DNA of 52,057 nucleotides from Octopus bimaculoides (GCF_001194135.2 NC_068983.1:135830833-135882889), one strand, 5' to 3'; shown: positions 18,401 through 52,057, counted from the stretch's first letter. The notes: generated from the sequence alone by a model not told the origin. Made by a program: numbers and translations.

Positions 18401-19045
18401 NNNNNNNNNNNNNNNNNNNNNNNNNNNNNNNNNNNNNNNNNNNNNNNNNNNNNNNNNNNNNNNNNNNNNNNNNNNNNNNNNNNNNNNNNNNNNNNNNNNN
18501 NNNNNNNNNNNNNNNNNNNNNNNNNNNNNNNNNNNNNNNNNNNNNNNNNNNNNNNNNNNNNNNNNNNNNNNNNNNNNNNNNNNNNNNNNNNNNNNNNNNN
18601 NNNNNNNNNNNNNNNNNNNNNNNNNNNNNNNNNNNNNNNNNNNNNNNNNNNNNNNNNNNNNNNNNNNNNNNNNNNNNNNNNNNNNNNNNNNNNNNNNNNN
18701 NNNNNNNNNNNNNNNNNNNNNNNNNNNNNNNNNNNNNNNNNNNNNNNNNNNNNNNNNNNNNNNNNNNNNNNNNNNNNNNNNNNNNNNNNNNNNNNNNNNN
18801 NNNNNNNNNNNNNNNNNNNNNNNNNNNNNNNNNNNNNNNNNNNNNNNNNNNNNNNNNNNNNNNNNNNNNNNTGTACGCCCGTTTGTACGCCCGTATGTAT
18901 GCCCGTGTGTACGTCCGTATGTACGTAAGTATATATGTAAGGACGTACATACGAAGGTATGTATGTACTTACGTCCGTAGGTATGTATGTACGTACGTAC
19001 CTACATAGGTATGTATGCTCGTACGTACGTACATGCGTACTTATG
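15430..19045. repeat. Degenerate tetranucleotide satellite built from TACG/TATG/TACA/TAGG units (two internal N gaps)
   Basis: Continuous tacgtacgtatgtagg-type sequence; gaps at 15860-15959 and 18147-18871. All the YVRT/TYIH ORFs in this span are artefacts of the repeat. Confidence 0.97.
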
Positions 19046-26669: not shown

Positions 26670-28400
26670 TTAATCATATTCCTGTGTTATAGCCATAGGA
26701 AGTTGTTAACAAAGAAAAAAATGTTTGTACATGTTGTCTGTTTATTCAATATGTTTATTCATTATGTTGCACATGCTGATCATACCATATGTAGCCATGG
26801 TCTCAAATGCTATGGGTTGAAACTTACAATATATTATTATTTGACCATATTTAATGTTTTTCCATTGTCCTGCCTATGTTGCAACATCAAATATATCAAT
26901 TGATGAAGGTATAACATATTTGCACAAATGTGTTACTGTGGTATACTATATGAGACACTGATCCTGTCTCCAAGGCAGACCATCTAGTCTTTTTACATTT
27001 GACTAATACAACCCTATAAACTCCAGTATATACATGACAGCACAGTTTTCAAAGGATCGTTTTGAACACATTGATTGTAGTATGTCTGGTGTGATGTATT
27101 GGCATTATACTTACAAGTTATAGCATCATGGTCCAAGCATTCATTCACCTGTCACAATGACATCTAATTTCATCATTTAATATGCATACACTATAATGCA
27201 TTAGCAATCAATATGAAGCTATTCCAGAGATAATAACAAAGTTCCTTGACTGGCAACTGGTAACTCTAACTAGATTGTTAAAGAACACTCTTAGGCTGTT
27301 AATAACTTGAAGCATACATGTCAACTTTCTGTAACAAACTATCAAACAGTATGCCATTCTATTCTCCTATCTTATATCTGAAAGTCAGATGTTATGTCTC
27401 CTGTCCCAGCAATCGATGTAGTCTCCAGATTTGACAAGAGTTCACTGATCAGGATGCCAAACATGTGAACTGATTCAAGAAATGTGGAGAGGACAACATT
27501 CACTAAAATCTTCAAGCCTAAACTACCATGCTGGCATGATGAATATTTATTGTAGAGTTGAACATTGATAATATTTTTGAAGATTATTTAATCAAAGTTT
27601 TGTAATCTACAGTAGATAACATGGAAAAAACCACAATGTTGATGTTGGAGATATAGAAAGAAAAGTTGATCTCAGAGCAGTGATGTACAGAAAGAGTTGC
27701 TGTAGTGCACAAGGCCAACTGTTACCAAAGTGGAAATACATAACATTAGTATCCAGGGTAGTCATAGCAGCATCATATAGGCCACTGGGCAAAGAAATGT
27801 GCAGAGCCTATAGCATTTATTTATTGACAGCAAACCACAGCATGCATATTTTTATATTGGACTCCTAGATTCATGGAGCCTTTTGGTAACTGTTGAATGT
27901 ACTCATGATTTAAGACAGCGCTATCAAGAATACACTGATGTTGAATCATTGCCGATATATTTTTAATTGACTTTGGAAAATTAATCTTATAACTTTTAAT
28001 GTCATTTTTCTATTTTCTCAATTTTCATCTAAAAATAAGACCACTCAACTGATTAACATGAAGTTTCTCATCAAAACACAAATCTTTGGCCCACAAGGAA
28101 ACTCATTCTGTCTTTTCTATCTCAACAACAGTGGCCTCTGTTCCTCAGAACTGACTATTCTGGTACTCGCTTAGTCTTTGTCCACCTGACTGAACTTGTC
28201 TTCCTCTCTTGTCAGCCATATTATGTCTGTTACTACCACCGTTGTACTAACAACTACACACCCTTCCTCAGTAGAATATCAATCCTTTGGAATTTCTGTA
28301 ATGGCCAACTTGAAGTTGTTCCAGAACATCAGCCATATTGATCATACCAGTCATGTTGAGGCCATGGGCGCAAACCCTGCATTCAGACCAACCCAACAAC
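26670..28400 (-). mobile_element. Decayed CRE-clade-like non-LTR retrotransposon, copy 2, convergent with copy 1
   Basis: Minus strand gives HGSLGLKILVNVVLSTFLESVH (thumb), KRLDGLPWRQDQCLI*YTTVT (26993-26940; RPDG..PW..G..L.WD.T endonuclease motif) and FQPIAFETMATYG..FLC*QLPMAITQE. The boundary towards 28400 is uncertain. Confidence 0.7.
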
Positions 28401-28639
28401 AACAACAAACAAAACGATTACCTGAAAATGACAACAGAGTGCGAACCTTAGAGTCCCTAAATTGTTGGGTTCACAAAAAAGAATAGAAAATATTGGATAT
28501 TTCTTCACTCAAGTTTGAAACATCAAATATAACTGAGTGGAAAATAGACATCGATAGTGTTAATACCTTTCTCAAGAGTATATATTCATCTGGAAACTGG
28601 AACACTAAAGTTTTGGATCAAGACCCTGAGAATTGTCTG

Positions 28640-28823
28640 TCACTGGTCCCATCCTTCATAATCGGAAGTTGCTACGTCTGAGGTACCAAAAATAACGTTT
28701 CTGGTTGATAGAGCCTGTAAAGGTACGCTCTGATTTTATCTCTTCGTTTTGCACTTTTCTGCCAGGAGTTATGTTTTCTTCAGTTCCACATTCGTGAGAG
28801 AAAAGCAAATTAGCCAAAATACG
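28640..28823 (+). promoter_or_regulatory. Candidate promoter/5'UTR of PRDX5 exon 1a with an ETS-type CGGAAGT motif
   Basis: CGGAAGT at 28663-28669, about 155 nt upstream of the ATG. CpG dinucleotides are visibly more frequent from about 28660 to 30030 than in neighbouring unique DNA (seen by eye, not counted). Confidence 0.4.
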
Positions 28824-28838
28824 ATGGGTGCCATAAAG
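28824..28838 (+). CDS. PRDX5: PRDX5 alternative first coding exon 1a (MGAIK), predicted short non-mitochondrial isoform of 160 aa
   Basis: acgATGG good start context, ATG GGT GCC ATA AAG, then a perfect GTAAGT donor at 28839 in phase 0. MGAIK|VGD parallels the mammalian short-form start MAPIK|VGD with the same intron position. Confidence 0.8.
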
Positions 28839-29233
28839 GTAAGTAAAGCTCATGTATTTATTGATATATATATGTTTGTGCACGTATTTACGAAATTGTA
28901 TTCAAATATGGGTAAAGTGGATCGAATCCACTTCACGCCTGCCAGGTTCCTATAAAATCAATGGGACGATGAATATTAGGAGATAAATGAAAAATTAATA
29001 TAGCAGTTTTTTATTGTTTTTAAATGGCTATAATGGTTCTTCACGGATATCACTTTCTCTTGCTATATATATATAGAGATATAGATATATATAGTATAGA
29101 CAGAATTACGTAAATATATGCAAACCAAAAGAAAAAGGTATTCAATAATATGCAGTTAATGATAATTTTCATTTATTTTGCCACCAGGGCTGATTCATCT
29201 GTATAAAATATGCTACAAAAAGTNNNNNNNNNN

Positions 29234-29428
29234 ATATGGGAGAATATACAAATAATAACAACAGACGAGGACAGGTGGTGTAAATAACAAAAGTATATAT
29301 TAGTATGACGCTCGGGAATACGGAAAGTCTTTGACGTTTCGAGCTACGCTCTTCAACAGAAAGAATACGGAGACAAGGAGAAAAACACGGAGAAAAAAAA
29401 TTGAATAGTGTTCAGTCAACGGTCAATC

Positions 29429-29430
<2 letters not shown>
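29234..29430 (-). mobile_element. Penelope-like element terminal-repeat (pLTR) fragment carrying the hammerhead motif
   Basis: Contains the hammerhead fold typical of PLE pLTRs. A homologous but truncated copy lies at ~36468-36547 (gggagaat..acaaa..agacga.gacaggtg.tgta.a.aacaaa..ta..tattagt.t.acgctcg), showing it is a dispersed repeat. Confidence 0.5.
29328..29364 (-). ncRNA. Penelope-type minimal type-I hammerhead ribozyme-like motif (core variant CUGUUGA)
   Basis: Minus strand reads UCUUU-CUGUUGA-A-GAGC-GUA-GCUC-GAAA-CG-UC-AAAGA. Stem I is 5 bp and perfect, stem II is 4 bp and perfect, helix III is reduced to the palindrome ACGU, and the cleavage triplet is GUC. Confidence 0.6.
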
Positions 29431-29465
<35 letters not shown>

Positions 29466-29915
29466 TAGTGATAGAAGTGTTTACTATATGTATATAATTT
29501 TATTGAAGAAATGTATAAGCTATTTAAAATGTGTATTATGATATGAGAAAAAGACATTCAAAATCTCTCACTCTCCGTATGTGTGTGCGAATATTTATCT
29601 ACATCACTTGTTAGCCACAAATCAAATATAAATTCCTTTTTACATTTCTTTTCTTTCATATGCACACGCACACGCGCACACACATTTATTTATGTTCTGC
29701 ACACTGATACGAAGAAAGCGGTGCCTTTCAAGTAGAAGTGTGTCCTATTTAACACTTAAGAACAGCTGATTACCAAGCTGTGCGAGTCAGTTTCAATCGA
29801 GTTTCTGGTCAAACCAAATGTGACAACAGTTCCCGCTAAGAACGCACTAAACAAAACTACAGTTGGAAACATTTAGCTTTTCCATTGTCAAGTGTGTTTG
29901 TACTTCTTTTATAAA

Positions 29916-30017
29916 ATGGCGTGCAGTCGTATTTCTGCTGTTATCCGTTGTAAAAGTTCTTATATAAATGGATCACGGAGACTATCGACATCGAATCCGG
30001 TCCGAGCTGCGCTCAAG
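29916..30017 (+). CDS. PRDX5: PRDX5 alternative first coding exon 1b encoding a mitochondrial-type presequence, predicted 189-aa precursor
   Basis: aaaATGG context. Translates MACSRISAVIRCKSSYINGSRRLSTSNPVRAALK: 5 Arg, 2 Lys, 7 Ser, no Asp or Glu. Donor GTTAGT at 30018 in phase 0; ends ..LK|VGD in frame with exon 2. Confidence 0.85.
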
Positions 30018-30325
30018 GTTAGTCGGAATTTTTTGTTTTGTGAGTTTTATTAAAAGAAAAATGGTTTGTCTTTGGTGATATCAAAATTAGAAGGAATATA
30101 TTTGTACGTGGATGTTTATCAACACTAACCTCTTTCCAACCAACTTAGGTGACTGATTTTAAAAGATAGTTTGATTGTTGAGGGGGGAAAATTATATTTT
30201 CCTTTTTAACTTTATCACATTATTCAATGTTATGTCGGTGTTGTATGTGTTATATAAAAACATAAATTTCTTTTAGCATGTGCTTTTTGTTTCTGACTAA
30301 TGAACAATTGACCGATACATATATA

Positions 30326-30528
30326 CAGGGTGTGTACAAAGTCTGGGTACACTGAGTAAATAAAATTATAACATAAACAATTAAATATAAGAAATAATAA
30401 TTTATTAAAGCATGTGTTAATCCCCATGTGGGTACATGGAGTAAATAAAATCATAACAAAATATAAGAAATAATAATTTCTTGAAGTATGTGTTAATCCC
30501 CATGTACCCAGACTTTGTGGACACCCTG
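30326..30528. mobile_element. 203-bp Tc1/mariner-type MITE with TA target duplication
   Basis: TIRs CAGGGTGTGTACAAAGTCTGGGTACA (30326-30351) and the reverse complement of 30503-30528 match at 24/26, with TA on both sides. The interior is an imperfect ~80-bp direct duplication. Confidence 0.9.
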
Positions 30529-30686
30529 TATGTATATATATAAATGTTAGGAAAGGTATTGGAGTCAACCAAGCCCTAAAGATACAGGTAATACCGAGTA
30601 AGTGCTGTATACCGACTAGTTTTGCCCCTGTCGTTGTAGCAACATGGGTGGGGAATATAACATAGGTCGTGTATTAGCGTGTGTAA

Positions 30687-30790
30687 AGAAAGAAAAGGGT
30701 AAAGAGACCAATGGCAAAGTTAGAATTATATTATATATACATAAAATATAATTCTAACTTTGCCATTGGTCTCTTTATCCTTTTCTTTCT
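30687..30790. repeat. 46-bp near-perfect inverted repeat with a 12-nt loop
   Basis: 30687-30732 versus 30745-30790 match at 45/46; the single difference is a G-U wobble in + strand RNA. Confidence 0.95.
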
Positions 30791-30796
30791 GTATAT

Positions 30797-30830
<34 letters not shown>

Positions 30831-31410
30831 AATTTGTGAGAGAGCGTTTATATTTGATAAGCACTAATGCAGGTAACTCTCGGCCCTTGAGGCATTTTTG
30901 TAATTGTTTGCCGGTTAAAATACATTAATACATTCACACATATATTCATAATAGTATATACAAATTGTATTACATATATAACACGTAATAAAATATTCAT
31001 AATAGACCTTCATGTTTTGAGTTCTCTCAAACCTGTGTGTGTGTGTGTGCGCGTGCATATATACATGTATATATATATATATATTATTAATTTTTCAAAA
31101 TTGATTTATTTAGTTTGTACATTAAACGTGAAAATAGTTTTATATATATGCATATGTAAATGAAACTATGTGCCCAAAAAAGGGCTTCGTAGGTCTTATG
31201 TTACTCTAAGATAGAGACGATACATATTGAATGACTCCTTCGAAATCAGTCAACATTCTTGTAGAAGTTTAATAAACATGTATTGATCGAATAAATTGAC
31301 ATACCTACACAAGTGTGTTCCCACCGAATTTGGATATTTCTAATGAAATCCTTCAGTTTAATGTTAAATTGCCCCTATATATAATTCAACATAAATACAT
31401 ATGTATGCAC

Positions 31411-31453
<43 letters not shown>

Positions 31454-32609
31454 TAAACTACAAATTATAGACCCCACCCGCCCACCGAATTTGATAACTT
31501 TGTGGAAAATGATACAGATTACGATTATATNNNNNNNNNNNNNNNNNNNNNNNNNNNNNNNNNNNNNNNNNNNNNNNNNNNNNNNNNNNNNNNNNNNNNN
31601 NNNNNNNNNNNNNNNNNNNNNNNNNNNNNNNNNNNNNNNNNNNNNNNNNNNNNNNNNNNNNNNNNNNNNNNNNNNNNNNNNNNNNNNNNNNNNNNNNNNN
31701 NNNNNNNNNNNNNNNNNNNNNNNNNNNNNNNNNNNNNNNNNNNNNNNNNNNNNNNNNNNNNNNNNNNNNNNNNNNNNNNNNNNNNNNNNNNNNNNNNNNN
31801 NNNNNNNNNNNNNNNNNNNNNNNNNNNNNNNNNNNNNNNNNNNNNNNNNNNNNNNNNNNNNNNNNNNNNNNNNNNNNNNNNNNNNNNNNNNNNNNNNNNN
31901 NNNNNNNNNNNNNNNNNNNNNNNNNNNNNNNNNNNNNNNNNNNNNNNNNNNNNNNNNNNNNNNNNNNNNNNNNNNNNNNNNNNNNNNNNNNNNNNNNNNN
32001 NNNNNNNNNNNNNNNNNNNNNNNNNNNNNNNNNNNNNNNNNNNNNNNNNNNNNNNNNNNNNNNNNNNNNNNNNNNNNNNNNNNNNNNNNNNNNNNNNNNN
32101 NNNNNNNNNNNNNNNNNNNNNNNNNNNNNNNNNNNNNNNNNNNNNNNNNNNNNNNNNNNNNNNNNNNNNNNNNNNNNNNNNNNNNNNNNNNNNNNNNNNN
32201 NNNNNNNNNNNNNNNNNNNNNNNNNNNNNNNNNNNNNNNNNNNNNNNNNNNNNNNNNNNNNNNNNNNNNNNNNNNNNNNNNNNNNNNNNNNNNNNNNNNN
32301 NNNNNNNNNNNNNNNNNNNNNGAGAATAATGACAACTAGTCAATGATGTTTATCAGCGAAATTCTATAAAATTCACAAAACAATAAAACTGTTTTGAAAT
32401 ATATGGTCATGCCGATAAGTTGATTTGACCTTAGCTGTATTTAAACGTAAACAAACAGGAATTTTCTAAATCAAAAAGCTCAAACCATTTTCTGTAGTTT
32501 ACTTTCTGATTAAATACTTCGTTTTAGATTATAATCGAGTAAGAGGACAACTTGAAATTGCGAATCGGTTTCGATTTCTGGCAGTAGCTGTGGCGGAATT
32601 CTGCATTAA

Positions 32610-32832
32610 CCCGTTAAGTCTCAGAGTACTTAAATTTCTGAATATTACTTTTAAATTTTTACAGATGGTTGAAAATAGATTAGAATGAAAAAATTAATTA
32701 TCAAAACTCCTTTACTTCAAGTAGAAATTGAAACACTCAGTGTCCAAGAAATAGGACACTGAGACACTGTGATATAGCTTATTTAATGTTTTCATTTAGT
32801 GTCCTATTTGTAGGACAGTGGGACTTAATGGG
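32610..32832. mobile_element. 223-bp piggyBac-type MITE with TTAA target duplication
   Basis: TTAA|CCCGTTAAGTCTCA ... TGGGACTTAATGGG|TTAA (TIR 12/14). Subterminal inverted motifs cagtgtcc..ggacactg and agtgtcct..aggacagt. Confidence 0.82.
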
Positions 32833-33319
32833 TTAAGCACCTCATATAACTCCTCATAACGTTTTTATTCTTTGGAATTTTCAACAAATTTTTGTGAATT
32901 TACGTTCTACACTGGGGAGTTCATACGATTATACAAAAAAAAATGCGAGTGATTTAAGGGCTGTTTAGCTGTTGTTTTAGCACATCTCTCGACCACTTGA
33001 TAACTTTGTTTCACTTCACTTCTGAATGTTCTAGGAAAATGCGAACTTCACGATTTCCATTTACCTCCATTTAACCTTTGGTTTTGAAGTCAAATGAAAA
33101 CTGTACATGGCTAATTAGTAGACTTTAGGAAATACCAACCGTACAGGTGCAATTCGTATTTCTAGCTTCTCTTAAATAACTTGATCCATTTAGATGTGGT
33201 AACTGTAAAGTTTAGCAATCAATCAAGGGAATTTGTACATTATCCATCGACCTGCTAGAAGATGCAATCCATGTCACCCTATCTTCTGGGGAAAAATTAT
33301 ATACAATATATATATAATC

Positions 33320-34000
33320 ATCATCATCATCATCATCGTTTAACGTCCGCTTTCCATGCTAGCATGGGTTGGACGATTCGACTGAGGACTGGTGAACCAG
33401 ATGGCTACACCAGGCTGCAATCTGATTTGGCAGAGTTTCTACTGCTGGATGCCCTTCCTAATGCCAACCACTCCGAAAGTGTAGTGGGTGCTTTTATGTG
33501 CCACCGACACGAAGGCCAGTCAGGCGGTACTGGCAACGGTCACGCTCAAAATGGTGTACTTTACGTGCCACCTGCACAGGAGCCAGATATCCATTGAAAT
33601 AAATTAACACCAGCCGGAGACACACATAACACACAACACAAACAGTAATATAACAAAAGACTGCATGACCACTTTGTAGAAAAAGGAAAGAAACTGACAC
33701 AGTACATACAATACGTGGAAGAGTTTGCACACTCTCAACAACAGAAAAGAACACACAACACCATTTGAGCGTGGACGTTGCCAGTGCTGCTGGACCGGCT
33801 CCTGTGCAGGTGGCACGCAAAAAAACACCATCCCGAGCATGGCTGCCGCCAGCACCGCCTGACTGGCCCTCGTGCGGGTGGCACGCAAAAGCACCCACCA
33901 CACTCTCGGAGTGATTGGAGCCATCTGGTTCGCCAGTCCTCAGTCAAATCGTCTAACCCATGCTAGCATGGAAAGTGGACGTTAAACAATGATGATGATG
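33320..34000. repeat. Head-to-head inverted pair of (GAT)n-tailed repeats in PRDX5 intron 1
   Basis: - copy at 33320-33595 and + copy at 33765-34000, separated by ~170 bp of unique DNA. Confidence 0.88.
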
Positions 34001-36467
34001 AATGTTGCATACATTCCAGCAACACTGTGGCTTAGCAGGTGATGCAGTAGAAATTTGCCTGAAACTACTTGTGGCAGACGCCCCCCCCTCCCCAGGTGAG
34101 AAGTGGGCTTTCAAACACCCAACTTTTATATTTTATGATTTCACCTTTCAAACATCCATCTTGCGATCCTATTCATTCAGTTTAATTATTAATTATTTTC
34201 TCAATATACATCCTTCTGCCCATTGTTTTTTTAGATCTAATCATAATGTGTTTATAATTTGCTGCTAACTTTCATATCCATCACCCACCCAACTGGTAAC
34301 AAAAACCACTCAGTTCTGTTTTGAAAGTGAGTCACCCAATTAAATTTAAATGTTTATTCGTTGAACTGAATTATATGATATCATATCATATTATATTACA
34401 TGTACCATCACAATTTTAATTCAGTATTTATAACAGCTGTTCAACAAATGGGAATGTGAAACTCTGAGTAACAGTTCTGTGATAATTTTGCAGTTTAAAT
34501 AAAAGCATATTGTTCTACCTTTAGTAATTGAGTACTATTTTTTTCCACCTTATTTTGCATTTATGTGCTTCCTCATGAATATTTATTCTTTTGCTTGTTT
34601 CAGTCATTTGACTGCAGCCATGCTGGAGCACTATCTTGTTGGGTTTTAGTTGAACAAATCGACCCAATGATGTATTTTCTGAAAGCTTAGTACTTAGTCT
34701 ATCAGCCTCCATCACCGAACCGCTAAGTTACAGGGGACATAAACACACCAAACAGAAACACAAAGACGCACACATATCTATACATATATATGTTCATCAT
34801 CATCGTCGTTGTTCAACGTCCGCTCCCCATGCCAGCATGGGCTGGACGATTTGACCGAGGACCGGCGGACCAGGAGGCGACACCAGGCTCCAATCCGACT
34901 TGGCAGAGCCTCCATAGCTGGATGCCCCTCCCAACGCCAACCACTCTGAGAGTGTAGTGGGTTCCCCCACATGCCACTGGCACGAGGGCCACATTCAAAA
35001 TGGTGCATCTCACATGCCACCCGCACAGGAGCCAGTCCATCGGCACTGGCAACGNNNNNNNNNNNNNNNNNNNNNNNNNNNNNNNNNNNNNNNNNNNNNN
35101 NNNNNNNNNNNNNNNNNNNNNNNNNNNNNNNNNNNNNNNNNNNNNNNNNNNNNNNNNNNNNNNNNNNNNNNNNNNNNNNNNNNNNNNNNNNNNNNNNNNN
35201 NNNNNNNNNNNNNNNNNNNNNNNNNNNNNNNNNNNNNNNNNNNNNNNNNNNNNNNNNNNNNNNNNNNNNNNNNNNNNNNNNNNNNNNNNNNNNNNNNNNN
35301 NNNNNNNNNNNNNNNNNNNNNNNNNNNNNNNNNNNNNNNNNNNNNNNNNNNNNNNNNNNNNNNNNNNNNNNNNNNNNNNNNNNNNNNNNNNNNNNNNNNN
35401 NNNNNNNNNNNNNNNNNNNNNNNNNNNNNNNNNNNNNNNNNNNNNNNNNNNNNNNNNNNNNNNNNNNNNNNNNNNNNNNNNNNNNNNNNNNNNNNNNNNN
35501 NNNNNNNNNNNNNNNNNNNNNNNNNNNNNNNNNNNNNNNNNNNNNNNNNNNNNNNNNNNNNNNNNNNNNNNNNNNNNNNNNNNNNNNNNNNNNNNNNNNN
35601 NNNNNNNNNNNNNNNNNNNNNNNNNNNNNNNNNNNNNNNNNNNNNNNNNNNNNNNNNNNNNNNNNNNNNNNNNNNNNNNNNNNNNNNNNNNNNNNNNNNN
35701 NNNNNNNNNNNNNNNNNNNNNNNNNNNNNNNNNNNNNNNNNNNNNNNNNNNNNNNNNNNNNNNNNNNNNNNNNNNNNNNNNNNNNNNNNNNNNNNNNNNN
35801 NNNNNNNNNNNNNNNNNNNNNNNNNNNNNNNNNNNNNNNNNNNNNNNNNNNNNNNNNNNNNNNNNNNNNNNNNNNNNNNNNNNNNNNNNNNNNNNNNNNN
35901 NNNNNNNNNNNNNNNNNNNNNNNNNNNNNNNNNNNNNNNNNNNNNNNNNNNNNNNNNNNNNNNNNNNNNNNNNNNNNNNNNNNNGATCCATAGGAATCGG
36001 TGATGTTAAAAATGTAAACTTCTCCTCAGGGAAAAGTATGAGAACCAGCTTAAATGTAAGACATTATAATCGAATATGAGAACTATAGTTAGAGAAGGTT
36101 ATAACGTAATTCATTTGAAAAAACCGTTAGAGAATAGGACGCTACCAGATAGTCCGTTGGACAAGAAGTGAAGAAGAGAAAAGAAAAAAGAAAAAAAGGG
36201 GAAGGAAAATTCAGAGTGTAGAATTGTAATTCTTCGAAACATATGTCGGAATAAAAGTATGCAGTTATAATATGCGTTTACTCCATTCTTTAAATTTATA
36301 TATACTCAAATACCCAAAATATCAAGGAGTTTCTACCTCATAAACAGGAGTTACACCACGGTTATTTTGTGATCTTTGCTACCCCGGTACCTATTAACCA
36401 ATTTATTTTATCCGAGATATTTTTTACTTGGAGAAAATAAATACATATAATAATATATATATATGTA

Positions 36468-36547
36468 TATAGGGGAGAATTCACAAAAAAAAAAAAGACG
36501 AAGACAGGTGATGTAGACAACAAACAGATGTATTAGTTTAACGCTCG
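36468..36547 (-). mobile_element. Second, truncated copy of the 29234-29430 repeat (stops before the hammerhead)
   Basis: Aligns by eye to 29234-29315. Confidence 0.55.
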
Positions 36548-37858
36548 CAGTCTCTTTTGCCACTAAATTATGTGATATATTGTGTATTTTAGTTATCATT
36601 AATCAAACTGTAAAGGTAGCAAAAATGGCCTAATTTCAGAAGGGTATAACTAATTTTTGTAAGAAAAATGAATAATTTGTCTACTGCATAGCAAATTTAT
36701 GAAACCCTTTTAGACTTGTCTTTGTTCTGTATGTAACAAATGTGTTCCTATGGTGTTTACAACTAAATATTGCTTTATAAATATTTAGTTTACTACTAAA
36801 TCTTTATCTAATAACTACTTATTAAACATAGCTTTTAGCTAGATTTGTCAGATTATTTTTTTAAATGTACTGCTATAGGGACTTATTTCATTCATCAACA
36901 CCCTTCACAAAAAAGAAAAAAAAAATGAACAAATTCACAACAATGAATTATCTTTGTTATAGAGCTAAAAGTATCTTGTTCCTACAGATGCTAGAGCTTA
37001 CAATATTTTCACAATCTTCAGAGTAACCCACTTTACCACATATTCTTCCTAAAAACCAAGTCTGCTTCACAAAGGATGGACTTACTCTTCAGAGCCAGAA
37101 AAATATATCAGTCTTGAGCAGTTACTAAGTTCATACAATAGGCAGATTTGCTTAACACTAGAAAACTATATCTGTCCTCCACACATATTCTAGAGCACAT
37201 TAAAAAAAAAAGGTATCTATCTGAGAAGCAAGCCTTTTGTTAGTATCACTCTGAATATTTGCCTACCATTCCTTCTCTCTATTCATTTCTCTTAATTCAT
37301 ATTGTCTCACTGAAATATTTCCCAATACTTTCTAAGCAATGGATTCTCATGCAGTTCCTTTTCCTTACAACTTTAGCCTTGCAAATAATTCAAATTACGA
37401 ACATTAAAACACATAAATTTTATCCACTTTTCCAGCCTAGAAGAGTTTTAAAAATGCTGCTCTCTTCATTAAATTTGTGAAAAACAACTAACCCCGAAAT
37501 ACCTTCATTTTGTGATTTCTAAATCTCTAACAGGGTGAGAGATTTAGAAATCTCTCTGAAATTTATCATTGATCACTCTACAAAACTTAGCACTCTCATA
37601 AATATCATTATACAGCAAGTAGTTTGTGAGAAAATTGTCATTTGGACTGATAATTGCCTGCAAATGAATAATAAAAAAACGACAATGAATATAACTTGTA
37701 ACTTTACATCTCTATAAGAACACCATATATGCTACCATTAAAGTACAATTTATACACAATAATGAAATTATTAAAACTGAAAAAAAGTTACTGTTGGTAT
37801 ATATTCACATATTCATGTGTGTGTATGTATATTTGTACTGTTTTCTTCTTCATTATAG

Positions 37859-37993
37859 GTTGGTGATGCTATCCCCAGTGCCAGTCTCTTTGAACACAAC
37901 CCTAACACCAAACTGAATTCTAGCGAACTGTTTGGTAGTGGAAAGCATGTTATTTTTGGTGTACCAGGTGCATTTACTCCTACTTGTTCAGAA
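37859..37993 (+). CDS. PRDX5: PRDX5 exon 2 (peroxidatic Cys)
   Basis: AG at 37857-37858 and GTAAGT at 37994. Translates VGDAIPSASLFEHNPNTKLNSSELFGSGKHVIFGVPGAFTPTCSE, containing the PGAFTPxCS active-site motif of Prx5. Confidence 0.97.
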
Positions 37994-39783
37994 GTAAGTT
38001 GCTTCTTGTTTATTTTCTAGAGATCTGATAGCTTAAAGGATGTATGTAATATGGGGTAAATTGGCTCCAAGATTAAAATACTTGACTGCTGACTGGCTTC
38101 AAGTTTAACTCTTACTAGTGCCTCTGTGCAATATACCTAACTCTACTTGTTCCAGTTGGCTGAATGTTATTCTCCATATTTTGTCTCCACTCTTTGACTA
38201 ATCATTGCCATTGTTAGTGCACCAGTTGCTGCTCATATGGTGTTTACAGTGCTCTTAGTGCCCTATATACTAAATCAATTGAAAATACTTAAGGAACCAC
38301 TGAACCTTGCAACCTTTAATGTCAGAACTTTGTGTCAAGTTGTTTAGAAAACTGATTTCACTCCCAGACAACATTTATGGACTCAATTTTGTTTATATTT
38401 GCAAAATAAAATTGTTGCTAGGGTGTATGTGTGATGTGTCCTTGCCTGCTATAAGCTTTTAAGTGAAGAGCTATATCTGTAGTGTTATTTCCATTTCCAA
38501 TTAACAGCCAAGCCTTTTGCTATTTTGTTATTGTTAGGAAAGACATGAATGTTACAACTGTCACAAGATATTTCATTGAAAATCTTGATCTTCATATACA
38601 CCTGATGAAGTCAGTAATAGAGAAAATTATGCAGCAAATTGTTGTCATTAAGCATCTAGTATCACAGATACAGTGTAGTAGTTTGCATGTAACTAATAGC
38701 ACTATAACTGATTTTGATTAAGTATAGTTCTGTGATTCAAACCTTACATTGTTTGATCTGATGTTTCATCTGTAAATAAAACTAATTTTGGATCGCATAA
38801 GGAAGAAGTGTCGCTCTTAATGTGAAGTGTTAAAGTACTTGAATATTTGTGGTGTTTGATGACTTTTGGCCTAGATTTTAATCCCGCACATGCATTTTAC
38901 CAGTAAATAAGGCTGAGATTAGGATCCTGTTCAAGAGAGTAATTATCATATGAGCAATTAATCTTATCTATACATTTACAATATTCACAATTGCACTTGT
39001 TATTATTGTTTATCCCAGGATATTTATATGGTTGATGAGTGGATTCAAACTAGGAGACTGTATTTCTAAACTAAGAGTAATAATATCCTTAGTCACTTGG
39101 CTAAAAGCACATAACTACTTTTGATTTAGAAATGAAAGTTCCTATTTTGAATCCTGTTTGTACCCAAAAATATGTTACCTAATACCCACAGTGGTTTACT
39201 TGATAAGAAAATGACTACCTTTTAATTTTCCAATAAAGGTTGAATAATAAAATATAAGAGTTGTTGAATCGTGTCTGGACCTTATGCATACTCAGAAAGA
39301 AGATTCTTTGTGTGAAAGTGAATCAAACCATTCAGAACCTAGAACAGATGCAAATGTAAATACACACTCTGAAGATTAAATTCATAGTCCAGAAAATTAT
39401 TATCTTATTAACAAATCATTTCAGGCATTTAATGAAATATCATGCTGCTTAATCCTATGGGAACTAAGGTAGGGTCTAGATCAGCAAACCAGAAAAATAG
39501 TGGTCTATGTACACACTTTAATACACATATCATCATCATCAGCATCATCATCATCATCGTCGTTTAACGTCCACCTTCCATGCTAGCATGGGTTGGACGA
39601 TTTGACTGAGGACTGGTGAAACCGGATGGCAACACCAGGCTCCAATCTAATTTGGCAGAGTTTCTACAGCTGGATGCCCTTCCTAACGCCAACCACTCAG
39701 AGAGTGTAGTGGGTGCTTTTACGTGTCACCCGCACGAAAACGGCCACGCTCGAAATGGTGTCTTTTATGTGCCACCCGCATAA

Positions 39784-41177
39784 GAGCCAGTCCAGGGGCA
39801 CTGGCAACGATCCCGCTTGAAAGATTCATGTGTCGCCCGCGCATGAGCCAGTCCAGGGTCACTGGCAACGATCCCGCTCGAAAGATTTCATGTGTCGTCC
39901 GCACATGAGCCAGTCCAGGGGCATNNNNNNNNNNNNNNNNNNNNNNNNNNNNNNNNNNNNNNNNNNNNNNNNNNNNNNNNNNNNNNNNNNNNNNNNNNNN
40001 NNNNNNNNNNNNNNNNNNNNNNNNNNNNNNNNNNNNNNNNNNNNNNNNNNNNNNNNNNNNNNNNNNNNNNNNNNNNNNNNNNNNNNNNNNNNNNNNNNNN
40101 NNNNNNNNNNNNNNNNNNNNNNNNNNNNNNNNNNNNNNNNNNNNNNNNNNNNNNNNNNNNNNNNNNNNNNNNNNNNNNNNNNNNNNNNNNNNNNNNNNNN
40201 NNNNNNNNNNNNNNNNNNNNNNNNNNNNNNNNNNNNNNNNNNNNNNNNNNNNNNNNNNNNNNNNNNNNNNNNNNNNNNNNNNNNNNNNNNNNNNNNNNNN
40301 NNNNNNNNNNNNNNNNNNNNNNNNNNNNNNNNNNNNNNNNNNNNNNNNNNNNNNNNNNNNNNNNNNNNNNNNNNNNNNNNNNNNNNNNNNNNNNNNNNNN
40401 NNNNNNNNNNNNNNNNNNNNNNNNNNNNNNNNNNNNNNNNNNNNNNNNNNNNNNNNNNNNNNNNNNNNNNNNNNNNNNNNNNNNNNNNNNNNNNNNNNNN
40501 NNNNNNNNNNNNNNNNNNNNNNNNNNNNNNNNNNNNNNNNNNNNNNNNNNNNNNNNNNNNNNNNNNNNNNNNNNNNNNNNNNNNNNNNNNNNNNNNNNNN
40601 NNNNNNNNNNNNNNNNNNNNNNNNNNNNNNNNNNNNNNNNNNNNNNNNNNNNNNNNNNNNNNNNNNNNNNNNNNNNNNNNNNNNNNNNNNNNNNNNNNNN
40701 NNNNNNNNNNNNNNNNNNNNNNNNNNNNNNNNNNNNNNNNNNNNNNNNNNNNNNNNNNNNNNNNNNNNNNNNNNNNNNNNNNNNNNNNNNNNNNNNNNNN
40801 NNNNNNNNNNNNNNNNNNNNNNNNNNNNNNNNNNNNNNNNNNNNNNNNAAGAGCCAGCCCAGGGGCACCGGCAATAATCCCGCTCGGAAGATTTCATGTG
40901 TCGCCCGCACATGAGCCAGTCCAGGGGCACTGGCAACGATCCCGCCCGAAACATTCCATGTGTCGCCCACACACGAGCCAGCCCAGGGGCACCGGCAACG
41001 ATCTCGCTCGAAAAACCTCATGTGTCACCCGCACAAGAGCCGGCCCAGGGGCACTGGCAACGATCCCGCTTGAAAGATTCATGTGTCGCCCGCGCATGAG
41101 CCAGTCCAGGGTCACTGGCAACGATCCCGCTCGAAAGATTTCATGTGTCGTCCGCACATGAGCCAGTCCAGGGGCAT
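39784..41177. repeat. GC-rich 61-62 bp minisatellite expanded from the internal repeat of an RTE-3'UTR element (gap 39925-40848)
   Basis: Unit gagccagtccaggggcactggcaacgatcccgctcgaaagatttcatgtgtcgcccgcacat, with starts at 39784, 39845 and 39907 and about five more units after the gap. Confidence 0.92.
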
Positions 41178-42473: not shown

Positions 42474-42605
42474 TCTCATTTACCTGGTTATATTGAAAAA
42501 CATAATGAACTCAAGAAGAAAGGGATTGTGTCTATCAACTGCGTGGCAGTCAATGATCCATTTGTTATGAAAGCTTGGGGTGAAGCCCATAATGCAACAG
42601 GAAAG
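42474..42605 (+). CDS. PRDX5: PRDX5 exon 3
   Basis: tttgcAG at 42472-42473 and GTGAGC at 42606. Translates SHLPGYIEKHNELKKKGIVSINCVAVNDPFVMKAWGEAHNATGK (HLPG and C.AVNDPFVM.AWG motifs). Confidence 0.97.
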
Positions 42606-42914: not shown

Positions 42915-43610
42915 TTTGATTTTGTGCTAATATAGATGGTCATGTGATGCGTAAGGATGAGGACAGCTGTGTGAAGATGATCCCAGTGGAGGGAACCTGT
43001 AGAAGAGGTAGACCCAGGAAGACATGGGACGTGGTGGTGAAGCATGATCTTCGAATGTTGAACCTCACAGAGGCAATGACAAGTTACCGAGACCTTTGGT
43101 GGNNNNNNNNNNNNNNNNNNNNNNNNNNNNNNNNNNNNNNNNNNNNNNNNNNNNNNNNNNNNNNNNNNNNNNNNNNNNNNNNNNNNNNNNNNNNNNNNNN
43201 NNNNNNNNNNNNNNNNNNNNNNNNNNNNNNNNNNNNNNNNNNNNNNNNNNNNNNNNNNNNNNNNNNNNNNNNNNATGCTGATGCCAGTGTCGTGTAACTG
43301 GCACCTTTTACATGCCGTGGGCAGTGACAAGTGATCAAGGCCTTTGGCAATCTACTATGCTTGAAAAGACTTGTCAAGCCAAATGAGATCATTGTCATGA
43401 TTGATGCTATACAAGTGGCACTTATGCCAGTGGCATGTAAAAAAACCCAGTACACTCTTGGAGTGGTTGGCATTAGGAAGGGCATCCAGCCATAGAAACC
43501 ATGCCAGATCAGAGTGGAACCTGGTGCAGCTCCCCAGCTTACTAGTTTTCAGTCAAACCATCCAACCCTGCTTGTATGGAAAATGGGCATTAAATGATGG
43601 TGATGATGAT
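42915..43610 (+). mobile_element. RTE LINE 3' end (ORF C-terminus, gap, 3'UTR, (GAT)n tail) in PRDX5 intron 3
   Basis: GHVMRKDEDSCVK..VEGTCRRGRPRKTWDVVVKHDLRMLNLTEAMTSYRDLW, then the shared repeat body ending ttaaatgatggtgatgatgat. Confidence 0.85.
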
Positions 43611-44051: not shown

Positions 44052-44090
44052 ATACGAATGTTGGCAGACATACAAGCAGAATTTACAAAG
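44052..44090 (+). CDS. PRDX5: PRDX5 exon 4 (39 bp)
   Basis: tttcAG at 44050-44051 and GTAAAT at 44091. Translates IRMLADIQAEFTK, equivalent to the 13-codon VRLLADPTGAFGK segment of human PRDX5. Confidence 0.93.
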
Positions 44091-45190: not shown

Positions 45191-45246
45191 GCTCTTGGTC
45201 TTGAGATCGACCTCTCAGCAGTGCTAGGAAATGTTCGATCAAAGCG
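45191..45246 (+). CDS. PRDX5: PRDX5 exon 5
   Basis: cattttAG at 45189-45190 and GTAAGT at 45247. Translates ALGLEIDLSAVLGNVRSK+CG (LG..RSKR motif with the catalytic Arg split across the intron). Confidence 0.95.
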
Positions 45247-47665: not shown

Positions 47666-47771
47666 GTATGCCATGGTTGTTGAGAATGGTATTGTCAAGC
47701 ACCTACTTGTAGAGCCTAGTGGAATAGAATTAACTTGCAGTGCAGCCAATAAACTGATGAGTGAAATTTAA
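47666..47771 (+). CDS. PRDX5: PRDX5 last coding exon (resolving Cys)
   Basis: tttctgtttttgcAG at 47664-47665. Translates (R)YAMVVENGIVKHLLVEPSGIELTCSAANKLMSEI*, with the LTCS resolving-Cys motif of atypical 2-Cys Prx and stop TAA at 47769-47771. Confidence 0.96.
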
Positions 47772-50900: not shown

Positions 50901-52057
50901 AATACAATCATGTCAAACTTAACAAAATCAGAATGTCTTAGTTTCATAAGTATCATGACCTTCCAATTTCAAGATAATGAGATAGCCATTCCTGCAAACA
51001 GAAGGCATTTGTAGTCCCTCTGGCTATCTGTCACACCTCAACAGTTATTTCATAGACAAAATTGAAAGTAAATACAAGAATGTCATTTAGTGTTTGTTCT
51101 TATCTATCTTGTGATAATCATTTCTATACATGTTCATACACACCCAGGCATGGTTGTGTGGCTAAGAAGATCAAACTTTATCAAGTGGTTTGGGATTCAG
51201 ATAGACTTAACTTCAGTGAAATTTGATAGAAGAAAACTGCATGAAAGCCAGCCATACACATGCTGAAAACCATTCTTGTCCAACACTGAACATTGGCAAG
51301 TCAAATTAAGACTACCACAAGAAGTCACATTTAACGTATACCAGTATGATGGGAAAGACACAGAAATAATGCATATGTGTTTGTCTCTGTATACTATCAC
51401 ATTTACATCACCTGAACAGTAATGATGTTGTTAATGAGTCCTGTAAACAAAATGACCTGTAGCTTGGTAGATTCAACATGCATAAACCAACAGAATAAAA
51501 AATATCTTATAATATTTTGTTTAGTCTATGCTATATCACTTGTGAATGATGACTCCAACAAAAGCAAATTTCCCTCCAGGTTGTGCAAGATGATATTGTG
51601 TGTGCTGAGACTGTGTACAGTCCTGTGTCCTACATAAATTCATGGATATATGTCACGTGGGCCTGACCACAGGGTTATGGAAAAAAGGCAGCGACAGGTT
51701 GACCTGTTCAACAAAAACAATGGCCTGCAAATTTTAGCCATCTTTAATTGTCTGGCTGACAGGCAGTGAAGATCCTTATGGTAATTTGTTTGATATATGG
51801 CATCATCATCGTCATCATCATCATCATCGTTTAACGTCCACTTTCCATGCTAGCATGGGTTGGACGACTTGACTGAGGACTGGTGAAACCGGATGGCAAC
51901 ACCAGGCTCCAATCTAAATTTGGCAGAGTTTCTACAGCTGGATGCCCTTCCTAACGCCAACCACTCAGAGAGTGTAGTAGGTGTTTTTACGTGTCACCTG
52001 CACGAAGGCCAGTCAGGCGATACTGGCAATGGCCACGCTCGAAATGGTGTCTTTTAT

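What the first reader, a model, noticed from the sequence alone, without database searches (positions are those of the whole stretch)
28824..37993. PRDX5 appears to split its mitochondrial and non-mitochondrial isoforms into two alternative first exons
Seen: two phase-0 donors can join exon 2. Exon 1a (28824-28838) encodes only MGAIK with a perfect GTAAGT donor. Exon 1b (29916-30017), 1.1 kb downstream, encodes an Arg/Ser-rich, acid-free 34-mer ending AALK with no internal Met. Established: mammalian PRDX5 makes both forms from two in-frame AUGs in a single exon 1 (..MAPIK|VGD). Here the presequence exon has no second AUG, so the short form needs its own exon, and that exon lies upstream. The similar 3' ends (GGTGCCATAAAG|GTAAGT versus GCTGCGCTCAAG|GTTAGT) hint at exon duplication. 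Inference: organelle partitioning of this peroxidase is set by promoter choice and could be regulated by tissue or stress. I cannot tell whether this has already been described.
Basis: partly seen in the sequence, partly recalled or inferred. Interest (0 to 1): 0.78.

Follow-up and report, generated by a model that had tools for sequence, protein, structure and literature searches.

The report
Octopus PRDX5 alternative first coding exons
The octopus antioxidant gene PRDX5 really does have two alternative starting exons, one giving a short form and one adding a mitochondrial address tag, but both forms are already in public gene annotations and the mechanism is a familiar one, so this is a tidy evolutionary variant rather than a surprise.

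Summary
The window is the Octopus bimaculoides PRDX5 locus. Exon 1a (28824-28838, MGAIK|GTAAGT) and exon 1b (29916-30017, a 34-residue acid-free Arg/Ser-rich peptide, |GTTAGT) both join exon 2 (37859) in phase 0. The resulting 160-aa and 189-aa proteins are identical to RefSeq isoforms X2 and X1. All three assembly gaps are intronic. The gap-free O. sinensis and O. vulgaris loci are collinear and carry both exons.

The mini-exon is conserved across coleoids: MDVIK, MATIQ, MATIK, MSTEIK. Cuttlefish- and squid-like transcripts show a direct 1a>exon 2 junction. Every other lophotrochozoan examined keeps the mammal-like internal Met (..MPIK|VGD). So 1b is the ancestral presequence exon that lost its second AUG, and 1a supplies the short form.

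Two parts of the interpretation are not shown. "Promoter choice" is untested, and one squid-like transcript splices 1a in frame into 1b, so splicing control remains possible. Exon duplication has no support beyond 12 constrained bases. A scallop has a similar upstream mini-exon (MYRT).

Dual targeting through alternative first exons is a well-known mechanism. Verdict: real, already annotated though apparently not discussed in the literature searched, and of modest interest.

The parts
27587..28823 (+). Region upstream of exon 1a: putative promoter A plus the 5' UTR of the short-form mRNA (extent inferred)
   Evidence: 87-98% identical to O. vulgaris per 60-nt window (most at or above 0.90), unlike the poorly aligning stretches of the intron just downstream. 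Decapodiform short-form transcripts carry 130-375 nt of 5' UTR before the 1a ATG. No in-frame ATG lies between the upstream TGA at 28731 and 28824. Kozak context aatacgATGG. The TSS itself was not mapped.
28824..28838 (+). Exon 1a coding part: ATG + 4 codons (MGAIK), donor AAG|GTAAGT, phase 0. It starts the 160-aa short (non-mitochondrial) isoform.
   Evidence: Exact match to XP_014774824.1. Orthologues: MDVIK|gtaaga in O. sinensis/vulgaris; MATIQ, MATIK and MSTEIK in decapodiform transcripts. The I-K aligns to the first residues of solved PRDX5 structures.
29224..29233 (.). Assembly gap (10 N) in the 1a-1b interval; intronic
   Evidence: The gap-free L002 and L003 keep 1a upstream of 1b in the same orientation.
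29697..29915 (+). Sequence just upstream of the 1b ATG: putative promoter B and/or 5' UTR (inferred). It contains only weak candidate acceptors.
   Evidence: 92-97% identical to O. vulgaris. Candidate AGs: the only one giving an open in-frame 1a-1b fusion is at 29877 (pyrimidine fraction 0.47). The best pyrimidine tract is at 29893 (0.76, AAG|T, out of frame). Real acceptors of this gene score 0.59-0.82.
29916..30017 (+). Exon 1b coding part: 34 codons, a mitochondrial presequence-like peptide ending AALK, donor AAG|GTTAGT, phase 0. It starts the 189-aa long isoform.
   Evidence: Exact match to XP_014774823.1. Charge +7/0, 24% Ser/Thr, hydrophobic moment 0.47 against 0.45 for the human PRDX5 presequence. 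It shares the R-x-[FL]-S-x-[ST]-[ST] stretch with bivalve, gastropod and cuttlefish presequences. Kozak context tataaaATGG; upstream in-frame TAG at 29874.
31531..32321 (.). Assembly gap in the 1b-exon 2 intron
   Evidence: The flanks align to L003 11869 and 12564, about 700 bp apart.
35055..35984 (.). Assembly gap in the 1b-exon 2 intron, flanked by copies of an interspersed repeat
37859..37993 (+). Common exon 2 (VGDAIP...PGAFTPTCSE), with the peroxidatic Cys motif; the acceptor shared by 1a and 1b
   Evidence: Acceptor pyrimidine fraction 0.82.
42474..42605 (+). Exon 3
44052..44090 (+). Exon 4 (IRMLADIQAEFTK)
45191..45246 (+). Exon 5 (ALGLEIDLSAVLGNVRSK-R)
47666..47771 (+). Exon 6 coding part with the resolving-Cys motif LTCS, C-terminus -SEI and the stop codon

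Best explanation
This is the Octopus bimaculoides peroxiredoxin-5 gene. It has six exons per transcript and two mutually exclusive 5' coding exons.

Exon 1b is the ancestral exon 1. It encodes a cleavable-type mitochondrial presequence, but in octopus it has lost the internal Met (..M-P-I-K|VGD) that other animals use to start the short form. Exon 1a lies 1.1 kb upstream. It is a five-codon mini-exon (M-x-x-I-K) with a consensus donor, and it supplies a start codon plus the first two residues of the mature fold.

Splicing 1a>2 yields a 160-aa enzyme without a presequence, presumably cytosolic or nuclear. Splicing 1b>2 yields a 189-aa precursor, presumably imported into mitochondria and processed to nearly the same mature protein. 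The arrangement predates the octopod-decapodiform split.

Shown: the exons, their phases, the exact annotated products, conservation of both exons, and direct 1a>2 and 1b>2 junctions in decapodiform transcripts. Inferred: mitochondrial versus non-mitochondrial localisation, and that the choice is made mainly by using two transcription start sites, one before 1a and one between 1a and 1b. I put that last step at about 50-60%.
For: - Gene model and products. The products are identical to RefSeq X1/X2.
- Family: Pfam Redoxin 2.8e-37. The best solved-structure matches are PRDX5 of Arenicola and human, aligned from the I-K of exon 1a.
- Both exons, ATGs, frames and donors are kept in the gap-free O. 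sinensis and O. vulgaris loci. O. vulgaris carries both isoforms, in an annotation where alternative forms were added by PASA from Iso-Seq/RNA-seq.
- Decapodiform transcripts: L004 MATIQ|VGD with a 300-nt 5' UTR lacking 1b; L005 and L006 MSTEIK|VGD; L010-L024 1b|VGD with 23-870 nt of upstream sequence lacking 1a.
- Ancestral state: chiton, bivalves, gastropods, horseshoe crab, a fly and human all read ..M-[PS]-[IV]-K-[VE]GD in the long form.
- A squid-like sequence still has RMPVK in 1b and also has 1a, which looks like an intermediate.
- Presequence-like composition of 1b.
- No strong acceptor precedes the octopus 1b ATG. This fits 1b being a true first exon.
Against: - No octopus read-level junction or TSS data could be examined here. 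The RefSeq and PASA models are indirect evidence.
- L007 shows 1a spliced to 1b in a squid-like species, so 1b is not always a first exon.
- The 470-870 nt upstream of 1b in the ten longest cuttlefish contigs is AT-rich with several ATGs. It could be retained intron rather than 5' UTR.
- In the cuttlefish cluster the long form was assembled in about 84 samples and the short form in one, so the 1a>2 mRNA may be minor.
- Localisation was not predicted with a dedicated tool or tested.
- O. bimaculoides and O. vulgaris are too similar (about 89%) for conservation of 1a between them to mean much on its own.
Confidence: 0.75

Rival explanations
1. There is one promoter upstream of 1a, and the isoform is chosen by alternative splicing. 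Every transcript starts with 1a. Skipping 1b gives the short form. Including 1b through an acceptor just upstream of its ATG gives the long form, either as an N-terminally extended presequence (in frame) or with the 1a AUG acting as an upstream ORF (out of frame).
For: L007 (squid-like) reads ...ATGGCTACAATCAAG|TTGTGTAATTCAATAGCACAAAAC ATGGCG..., which is 1a joined in frame 24 nt upstream of the 1b ATG. Cuttlefish contigs have a textbook polypyrimidine tract plus TAG 6 nt before the 1b ATG. In octopus an in-frame AG exists at 29877 and a pyrimidine-rich AAG at 29893.
Against: The octopus candidate acceptors are weak. RefSeq X1 starts at the 1b Met rather than at an extended ORF. None of 15 cuttlefish long-form contigs contains 1a. 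L007 is a single contig from a metatranscriptome.
Confidence: 0.2
2. Exon 1a is essentially a non-coding leader exon of a minor upstream start site. Its AUG is fortuitous, the 160-aa protein has little biological role, and non-mitochondrial PRDX5, if any, arises from incomplete import of the long form.
For: The scallop Pecten maximus has an annotated upstream mini-exon whose peptide (MYRT) is unrelated to M-x-x-I-K. This shows that such leader exons can carry arbitrary short ORFs. The short-form contig is rare in cuttlefish assemblies. Two of five 1a codons differ between O. bimaculoides and O. sinensis.
Against: The ATG, the frame (with length 5-6 codons), the donor position, the penultimate Ile and the final K/Q are kept in octopus, cuttlefish-like and two squid-like lineages. 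The final residue matches that of 1b within each lineage (K/K or Q/Q). Both ATGs have A at -3 and G at +4. The lineages that lost the internal Met have no other in-frame AUG upstream of the catalytic Cys.
Confidence: 0.08
3. It is an assembly or annotation artefact: 1a and 1b sit on different contigs of a gapped scaffold and may not belong to one transcription unit.
For: A 10-N gap separates the contig holding 1a from the one holding 1b, and the newer public assembly keeps the same gaps.
Against: Two gap-free assemblies of sister species have the same order, orientation and spacing. L007 physically links 1a, 1b and exon 2 in one transcript.
Confidence: 0.01

Closest known systems
Human/mammalian PRDX5 (L-PRDX5 and S-PRDX5)
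   Same: It is the same enzyme family, with the same six-exon layout per transcript and the same outcome: a presequence-bearing long form and a short form starting M-x-x-I-K-VGD. The mature proteins are nearly identical (PMC3759418).
   Different: Mammals encode both start codons in a single exon I and choose between them by several transcription start sites and AUG usage. Octopus has no second AUG in the presequence exon and puts the short-form start on a separate five-codon exon 1.1 kb upstream. The human C-terminus is a weak PTS1 (SQL). Octopus ends in -SEI, which does not fit the usual PTS1 pattern (own knowledge of the consensus).
Genes dual-targeted by alternative first exons or promoters, such as UNG1/UNG2, DUT-M/DUT-N and GPX4 (named from my own knowledge, not tested here); reviewed generally in PMC13082882 and PMC12718117, which the searches listed but I did not read
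   Same: The logic is the same: one 5' exon encodes a mitochondrial presequence, the alternative 5' exon does not, and both join a common exon 2.
   Different: These are different gene families. In octopus PRDX5 the non-mitochondrial exon is only five codons long and lies upstream of the presequence exon. Whether two promoters are involved was not shown.
Pecten maximus PRDX5 isoforms X1/X2 (RefSeq models)
   Same: An upstream ATG-bearing mini-exon (MYRT|gtaaaa, L105 10001-12) and a downstream presequence exon (ATG at L105 10128) are both annotated as joining exon 2 (VGD...).
   Different: The mini-exon is only 115 nt upstream and its peptide is unrelated to M-x-x-I-K. The scallop presequence exon still has the internal Met (NMSAK), so the scallop does not depend on the mini-exon for a short form.
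Decapodiform cephalopod PRDX5 (Sepiella maindroni AKN23455.1 cluster and related transcripts)
   Same: These are orthologous 1a (MATIQ, MATIK, MSTEIK) and 1b exons. The cuttlefish 1b has also lost the internal Met (RIPIQ).
   Different: One squid-like sequence keeps the internal Met (RMPVK) and shows 1a>1b splicing. The C-termini (-NDL, -KEL, -EDL) differ from octopus -SEI.

Membership tests
Peroxiredoxin-5 (atypical 2-Cys peroxiredoxin, Redoxin fold) | Redoxin / AhpC-TSA domain over the whole mature protein | tested here: met
   Pfam PF08534 E=2.8e-37 (residues 34-174) and PF00578 E=4.3e-11.
Peroxiredoxin-5 (atypical 2-Cys peroxiredoxin, Redoxin fold) | Closest relatives are PRDX5 proteins rather than other peroxiredoxin classes | tested here: met
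   The top solved structures are PRDX5 of Arenicola (2wfc, 1.8e-52) and human (1hd2/1h4o, 5e-49). The top database hits are named peroxiredoxin-5.
Peroxiredoxin-5 (atypical 2-Cys peroxiredoxin, Redoxin fold) | Peroxidatic Cys in PGAFTPxCS, resolving Cys in G.xLTCS, and a conserved Arg in R-S/L-K-R | tested here: met
   VPGAFTPTCSE (exon 2), RSKRYAM (exons 5/6) and IELTCSAA (exon 6) align to the human motifs. The roles of these residues come from my own knowledge of human PRDX5.
Peroxiredoxin-5 (atypical 2-Cys peroxiredoxin, Redoxin fold) | Six-exon gene organisation | tested here: met
   Each transcript has six coding exons (1a or 1b, then 2-6). Human PRDX5 has six exons (PMC3759418).
Cleavable N-terminal mitochondrial presequence (exon 1b peptide) | Net positive charge, no acidic residues, rich in Ser/Thr/Arg | tested here: met
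   +7/0 and 24% S/T. The first 34 residues of the short form are +3/-3.
Cleavable N-terminal mitochondrial presequence (exon 1b peptide) | Amphipathic helix potential | tested here: inconclusive
   The maximum 18-residue hydrophobic moment is 0.47, similar to the human PRDX5 presequence (0.45). This is a crude home-made measure, and other molluscan presequences score 0.27.
Cleavable N-terminal mitochondrial presequence (exon 1b peptide) | Processing-peptidase motif (Arg at -2/-3) and a predictor call (TargetP/MitoFates) | not testable with these tools
   RRL|STS and VRA|AL are visible by eye, and R-x-[FL]-S is shared with other molluscs. No predictor was available.
Cleavable N-terminal mitochondrial presequence (exon 1b peptide) | Import into mitochondria demonstrated | not testable with these tools
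   This needs GFP-fusion or fractionation experiments.
Dual targeting by alternative first exons / alternative promoters | Two mutually exclusive 5' exons, each with its own ATG, joined to a common exon | tested here: met
   Exact RefSeq X1/X2 and O. vulgaris isoforms. Direct junctions in decapodiform transcripts.
Dual targeting by alternative first exons / alternative promoters | A separate transcription start site for each exon | not testable with these tools
   No CAGE, 5' RACE or read-level data were reachable. The 5' ends of cuttlefish contigs are only suggestive.
Dual targeting by alternative first exons / alternative promoters | The downstream alternative exon is never used as an internal exon | tested here: inconclusive
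   Octopus acceptor candidates are weak, but a squid-like transcript splices 1a into 1b.
Peroxisomal targeting signal 1 on the short form (as in human S-PRDX5) | C-terminal tripeptide of the [SAC]-[KRHQ]-[LM] type | tested here: not met
   The octopus C-terminus is -SEI. The consensus is from my own knowledge. Human uses SQL.

The most novel reading that the evidence does not exclude
Coleoid cephalopods replaced the ancient metazoan 'two AUGs in one exon' solution for PRDX5 dual targeting with a dedicated five-codon exon. The choice among three outputs (1a>2 short form, 1b>2 precursor, and 1a>1b>2 with a masked or extended presequence or an upstream ORF) would then be a regulated switch combining promoter use and splicing. 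That switch would tune mitochondrial against cytosolic peroxide defence by tissue or stress. The squid-like RMPVK sequence would be a living intermediate of the transition.
Probability: 0.2. Interest if true: 0.45.

Novelty: new member of a known kind. Interest (0 to 1): 0.3.

Why it matters
If the two exons are driven by separate promoters, octopus could set the mitochondrial-to-cytosolic ratio of a major peroxide and peroxynitrite reductase at transcription. That ratio could be read from ordinary RNA-seq junction counts, which is harder in mammals because there the forms differ only by start site within one exon.

It also gives a small, clean example of how a dual-targeting mechanism turns over in evolution. 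A backup start exon appears first, as in the squid-like intermediate and possibly the scallop. The internal AUG is then lost, in octopus and in cuttlefish; whether those are independent losses was not tested.

It does not change what is known about PRDX5 function. Both isoforms are already in RefSeq and UniProt.

Tried and rejected
- Exact-sequence lookup of the 160-aa form returned 'not on record', because only the longest product per gene is indexed. I used the 189-aa form instead.
- The newer public O. bimaculoides assembly has the same gaps as the window, so it could not resolve them. I used the gap-free O. sinensis and O. vulgaris loci.
- Argonauta hians locus (L009): neither blastn nor tblastn found an alignable 1a or 1b. 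Its annotated isoform X1 first exon is a diverged copy of a LYR-family exon 9 kb upstream, so it says nothing about 1a/1b.
- The Logan contig L008, the only octopus-like transcript contig, is a chimera that breaks inside exon 2. It is uninformative about the 5' end.
- The metagenome/metatranscriptome scan with the squid-like protein found no further cephalopod transcripts; the best hit was 64% identical.
- Exon duplication test: local alignment of ±150 nt around the two donors scored below the shuffled mean. Duplication is neither supported nor excluded at this age.
- An alignment of the 5' UTRs upstream of 1a across octopus, cuttlefish and squid was only weakly alignable (54% mean column identity) and showed no clear conserved element.
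- N-myristoylation of MGAIK: rejected by eye. Val at position 5 after Gly does not fit the usual pattern, and O. sinensis has Asp instead of Gly (own knowledge).
- The Drosophila Prx5 papers (PMC2842572, PMC2430878) that might describe fly isoforms were not held. The fly comparison is therefore untested.
- Literature searches for PRDX5 with cephalopods, alternative first exons, alternative promoters or molluscs found nothing on this arrangement.
- The bacterial promoter/terminator scanner was not used, because it does not apply to an animal gene.

Full report
**What is in the sequence**

The window is AT-rich animal DNA (36% G+C) with nine assembly gaps. tblastn with human PRDX5 placed three exons, and I found the rest by eye. 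The model is 1a 28824-28838, 1b 29916-30017, exon 2 37859-37993, exon 3 42474-42605, exon 4 44052-44090, exon 5 45191-45246 and exon 6 47666-47771. All boundaries are AG/GT.

Exon 1a is ATGGGTGCCATAAAG|gtaagt (MGAIK). Exon 1b encodes MACSRISAVIRCKSSYINGSRRLSTSNPVRAALK|gttagt. Both end in phase 0 and read straight into VGDAIP... of exon 2.

**Identity and prior annotation**

The 189-aa product is 100% identical to 'peroxiredoxin-5, mitochondrial isoform X1 [Octopus bimaculoides]'. An exact-sequence lookup shows that the 160-aa product is XP_014774824.1 (isoform X2) and the 189-aa product is XP_014774823.1 (isoform X1).

O. sinensis and O. vulgaris carry the same pair: a 160-aa form starting MDVIK and a 189-aa form. 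In the O. vulgaris annotation, UTRs and alternative forms were added by two rounds of PASA updates from Iso-Seq and RNA-seq assemblies (PMC10700109). That is indirect transcript support. So both isoforms already sit in public databases. I found no paper that discusses them.

The protein is a bona fide PRDX5. It matches Pfam Redoxin at 2.8e-37. The best solved-structure matches are Arenicola and human PRDX5, and the alignment starts at the I-K contributed by exon 1a.

**The gaps**

The program's warning was tested first in substance. The three gaps inside the finding (29224-29233, 31531-32321, 35055-35984) all lie between exons, so no reading frame crosses a gap.

The chromosome-level O. bimaculoides record is identical to the window, gaps included (L001), so it does not help. 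The O. sinensis (L002) and O. vulgaris (L003) loci have no gaps. They are collinear with the window at about 85-93% identity over the aligned blocks. Both contain 1a (ATGGATGTCATAAAG|gtaaga), then 1b 935-964 nt downstream (|gtcagt), then exon 2. Order, orientation and continuity are therefore confirmed.

**Is it more than chance?**

From sequence alone it is only marginally so. In the 13.9 kb upstream of exon 2 there are 3-5 ATG-initiated open segments that end in phase 0 at a strong donor. What lifts 1a and 1b above chance is the exact match to annotated products and their conservation in distant cephalopods.

**Conservation and evolution**

Cuttlefish-like and squid-like transcripts from public RNA assemblies show the short form directly:
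- L004 reads ...ctaataATGGCTACAATCCAG|GTTGGCGAT (MATIQ-VGD). Its 300 nt of 5' UTR contain no 1b sequence.
- L005 and L006 read ATGTCTACTGAAATCAAG|GTTGGTGAT (MSTEIK-VGD).

So the mini-exon pattern M-x-x-(x)-I-[KQ] is shared by octopods and decapodiforms.

The long forms of cuttlefish end ...SSALRIPIQ|VGD, with no internal Met, as in octopus. A squid-like metatranscriptome sequence ends ...SSALRMPVK|VGD.

Every non-cephalopod long form I looked at keeps the mammal-like internal Met directly before the exon 1/2 boundary:
- chiton: SNMPIKVGD
- Solemya: AAMPIKVGD
- scallops: ASMSVKVGD
- oyster: SAMSIKVGD
- abalone: LNMPIKEGD
- Limulus: KKMPIKVGD
- a fly: GVMSQIKVGD
- human: AAMAPIKVGD

The octopus 1b peptide also shares the R-x-[FL]-S-x-[ST]-[ST] stretch of other molluscan presequences.

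The simplest history is this. Exon 1b is the ancestral exon 1. Exon 1a was added upstream before the coleoid radiation. The internal AUG was then lost in the octopus and cuttlefish lineages, and the squid-like sequence retains both devices. Within each lineage the last residue of 1a equals the last residue of 1b (K/K or Q/Q). This fits selection for nearly identical mature N-termini.

**Presequence character**

The 1b peptide has +7/0 charge, 24% Ser/Thr and a maximal helical hydrophobic moment of 0.47, against 0.45 for the human PRDX5 presequence. The first 34 residues of the short form are +3/-3 with a moment of 0.18. This is a crude, home-made measure, and no dedicated predictor was available. 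Mitochondrial import is therefore inferred, not shown.

**How the choice is made**

In its favour:
- No strong acceptor precedes the octopus 1b ATG. The only AG that would give an open in-frame 1a-1b fusion (29877) has a pyrimidine fraction of 0.47. The best tract (29893, AAG|T) is out of frame. Real acceptors of this gene score 0.59-0.82.
- RefSeq X1 begins at the 1b Met.
- Fifteen independent cuttlefish long-form contigs carry 23-870 nt upstream of the 1b ATG without 1a.
- The regions upstream of 1a and around 1b align to O. vulgaris at about 87-98% per 60-nt window, while parts of the intervening intron align poorly or not at all.

Against it:
- L007 reads ...ATGGCTACAATCAAG|TTGTGTAATTCAATAGCACAAAAC ATGGCGTGT.... 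This is 1a spliced in frame to 24 nt upstream of the 1b ATG. So 1b can be an internal exon in a decapodiform.
- Cuttlefish have a textbook polypyrimidine tract plus AG 6 nt before the 1b ATG.
- The long 'UTRs' of the cuttlefish contigs could be retained intron.

I therefore give about 50-60% to two promoters and about 20% to a single promoter with splicing control. The remainder goes to mixtures of the two and to the minor rivals.

**Exon duplication**

Anchored on the donors, 16 of 42 positions match. The best local alignment of ±150 nt scores 10, against a shuffled mean of 11.2. Duplication is neither supported nor excluded.

**Comparison with what is known**

Mammalian PRDX5 uses one exon I with two in-frame ATGs and several transcription start sites (PMC3759418; PMC5806436). 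Octopus differs in placing the two starts on two exons.

Placing a presequence on an alternative first exon is a well-known mechanism of dual targeting; the examples I know (UNG, DUT, GPX4) come from my own knowledge. It is not even unique among molluscan PRDX5 models. Pecten maximus isoform X2 starts MYRT|VGD from a mini-exon 115 nt upstream of the presequence exon. That peptide is unrelated, though, and the scallop keeps its internal Met.

The octopus C-terminus (-SEI) does not resemble the weak PTS1 of human PRDX5. The short form is therefore probably cytosolic or nuclear rather than peroxisomal (inference).

**Verdict**

The case is a new member of a known kind of mechanism, already present in automated annotations and apparently not described in the literature searched. 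Interest is modest (0.3). It rises somewhat if junction and TSS data show regulated switching among the three transcript types.

Noticed in passing
L007 81-290 (JGI metatranscriptome 3300018952, squid-like): This transcript has exon 1a (MATIK) spliced in frame to 24 nt upstream of the 1b ATG. It predicts MATIKLCNSIAQN+MACYIK..., a presequence with a 13-residue N-terminal extension. Its 1b still ends RMPVK, so the internal Met is retained.
   Followed up: partly
L105 10001-10226 (Pecten maximus LR736840.1): The scallop PRDX5 has an annotated alternative mini-exon ATGTACAGAACG|gtaaaa (MYRT) only 115 nt upstream of the presequence exon (RefSeq isoforms X2 and X1). Upstream leader exons that bypass the presequence may be widespread in molluscan PRDX5.
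   Followed up: partly
L009 10001-10147 and 791-961 (Argonauta hians BAAFZT010000015.1): The annotated first exon of Argonauta PRDX5 'isoform X1' is a diverged copy (58% aa identity) of a Complex1_LYR-family exon lying 9 kb upstream (Pfam 4.7e-12). It could be an exon capture or a chimeric gene model. No counterpart of octopus 1a or 1b could be aligned in that locus.
   Followed up: partly
window 15454-18133 (continuing beyond the gap at 18147-18871): There is a large degenerate tandem array based on CGTA/TACG (periods 4, 24 and 28, about 540 copies, 66-75% matches). It creates long spurious 'TYVRTY' ORFs on both strands and is interrupted by two assembly gaps.
   Followed up: partly
window 14026-14868 (-), with the adjacent ORF 14870-15409 (-): This is a reverse-transcriptase ORF fragment (Pfam RVT_1, 1e-07), presumably a decayed non-LTR retroelement about 14 kb upstream of PRDX5.
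   Followed up: partly
window 33300-33600 and at least 12 further copies (for example 3-183, 5080-5242, 6616-6795, 7742-7997, 34779-34991, 39543-39790, 43430-43610, 51805-52056): An interspersed repeat of about 250 bp occurs in both orientations at 74-94% identity. Related pieces are also scattered through the Argonauta locus. Several copies abut the assembly gaps at 35055, 39925 and 43103, which probably explains those gaps.
   Followed up: partly
L008 (Logan SRR16213285 contig, 1551 nt): This octopus-like PRDX5 contig is chimeric. Antisense sequence of an RRM-domain gene is fused inside PRDX5 exon 2, so the called 137-aa product starting MNSSELF is an assembly artefact.
   Followed up: no
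window 27330-27516: This 187-bp segment aligns to O. sinensis and O. vulgaris at 96% identity but in the opposite orientation, directly next to the collinear block that starts at 27527. It is a small inversion or an inverted repeat about 1.3 kb upstream of exon 1a.
   Followed up: no
window 47757-47771 (C-terminus): Octopus PRDX5 ends in -SEI. Decapodiform orthologues end in -NDL, -KEL or -EDL and human in -SQL. The peroxisomal signal described for human S-PRDX5 does not seem to be conserved in octopus.
   Followed up: no
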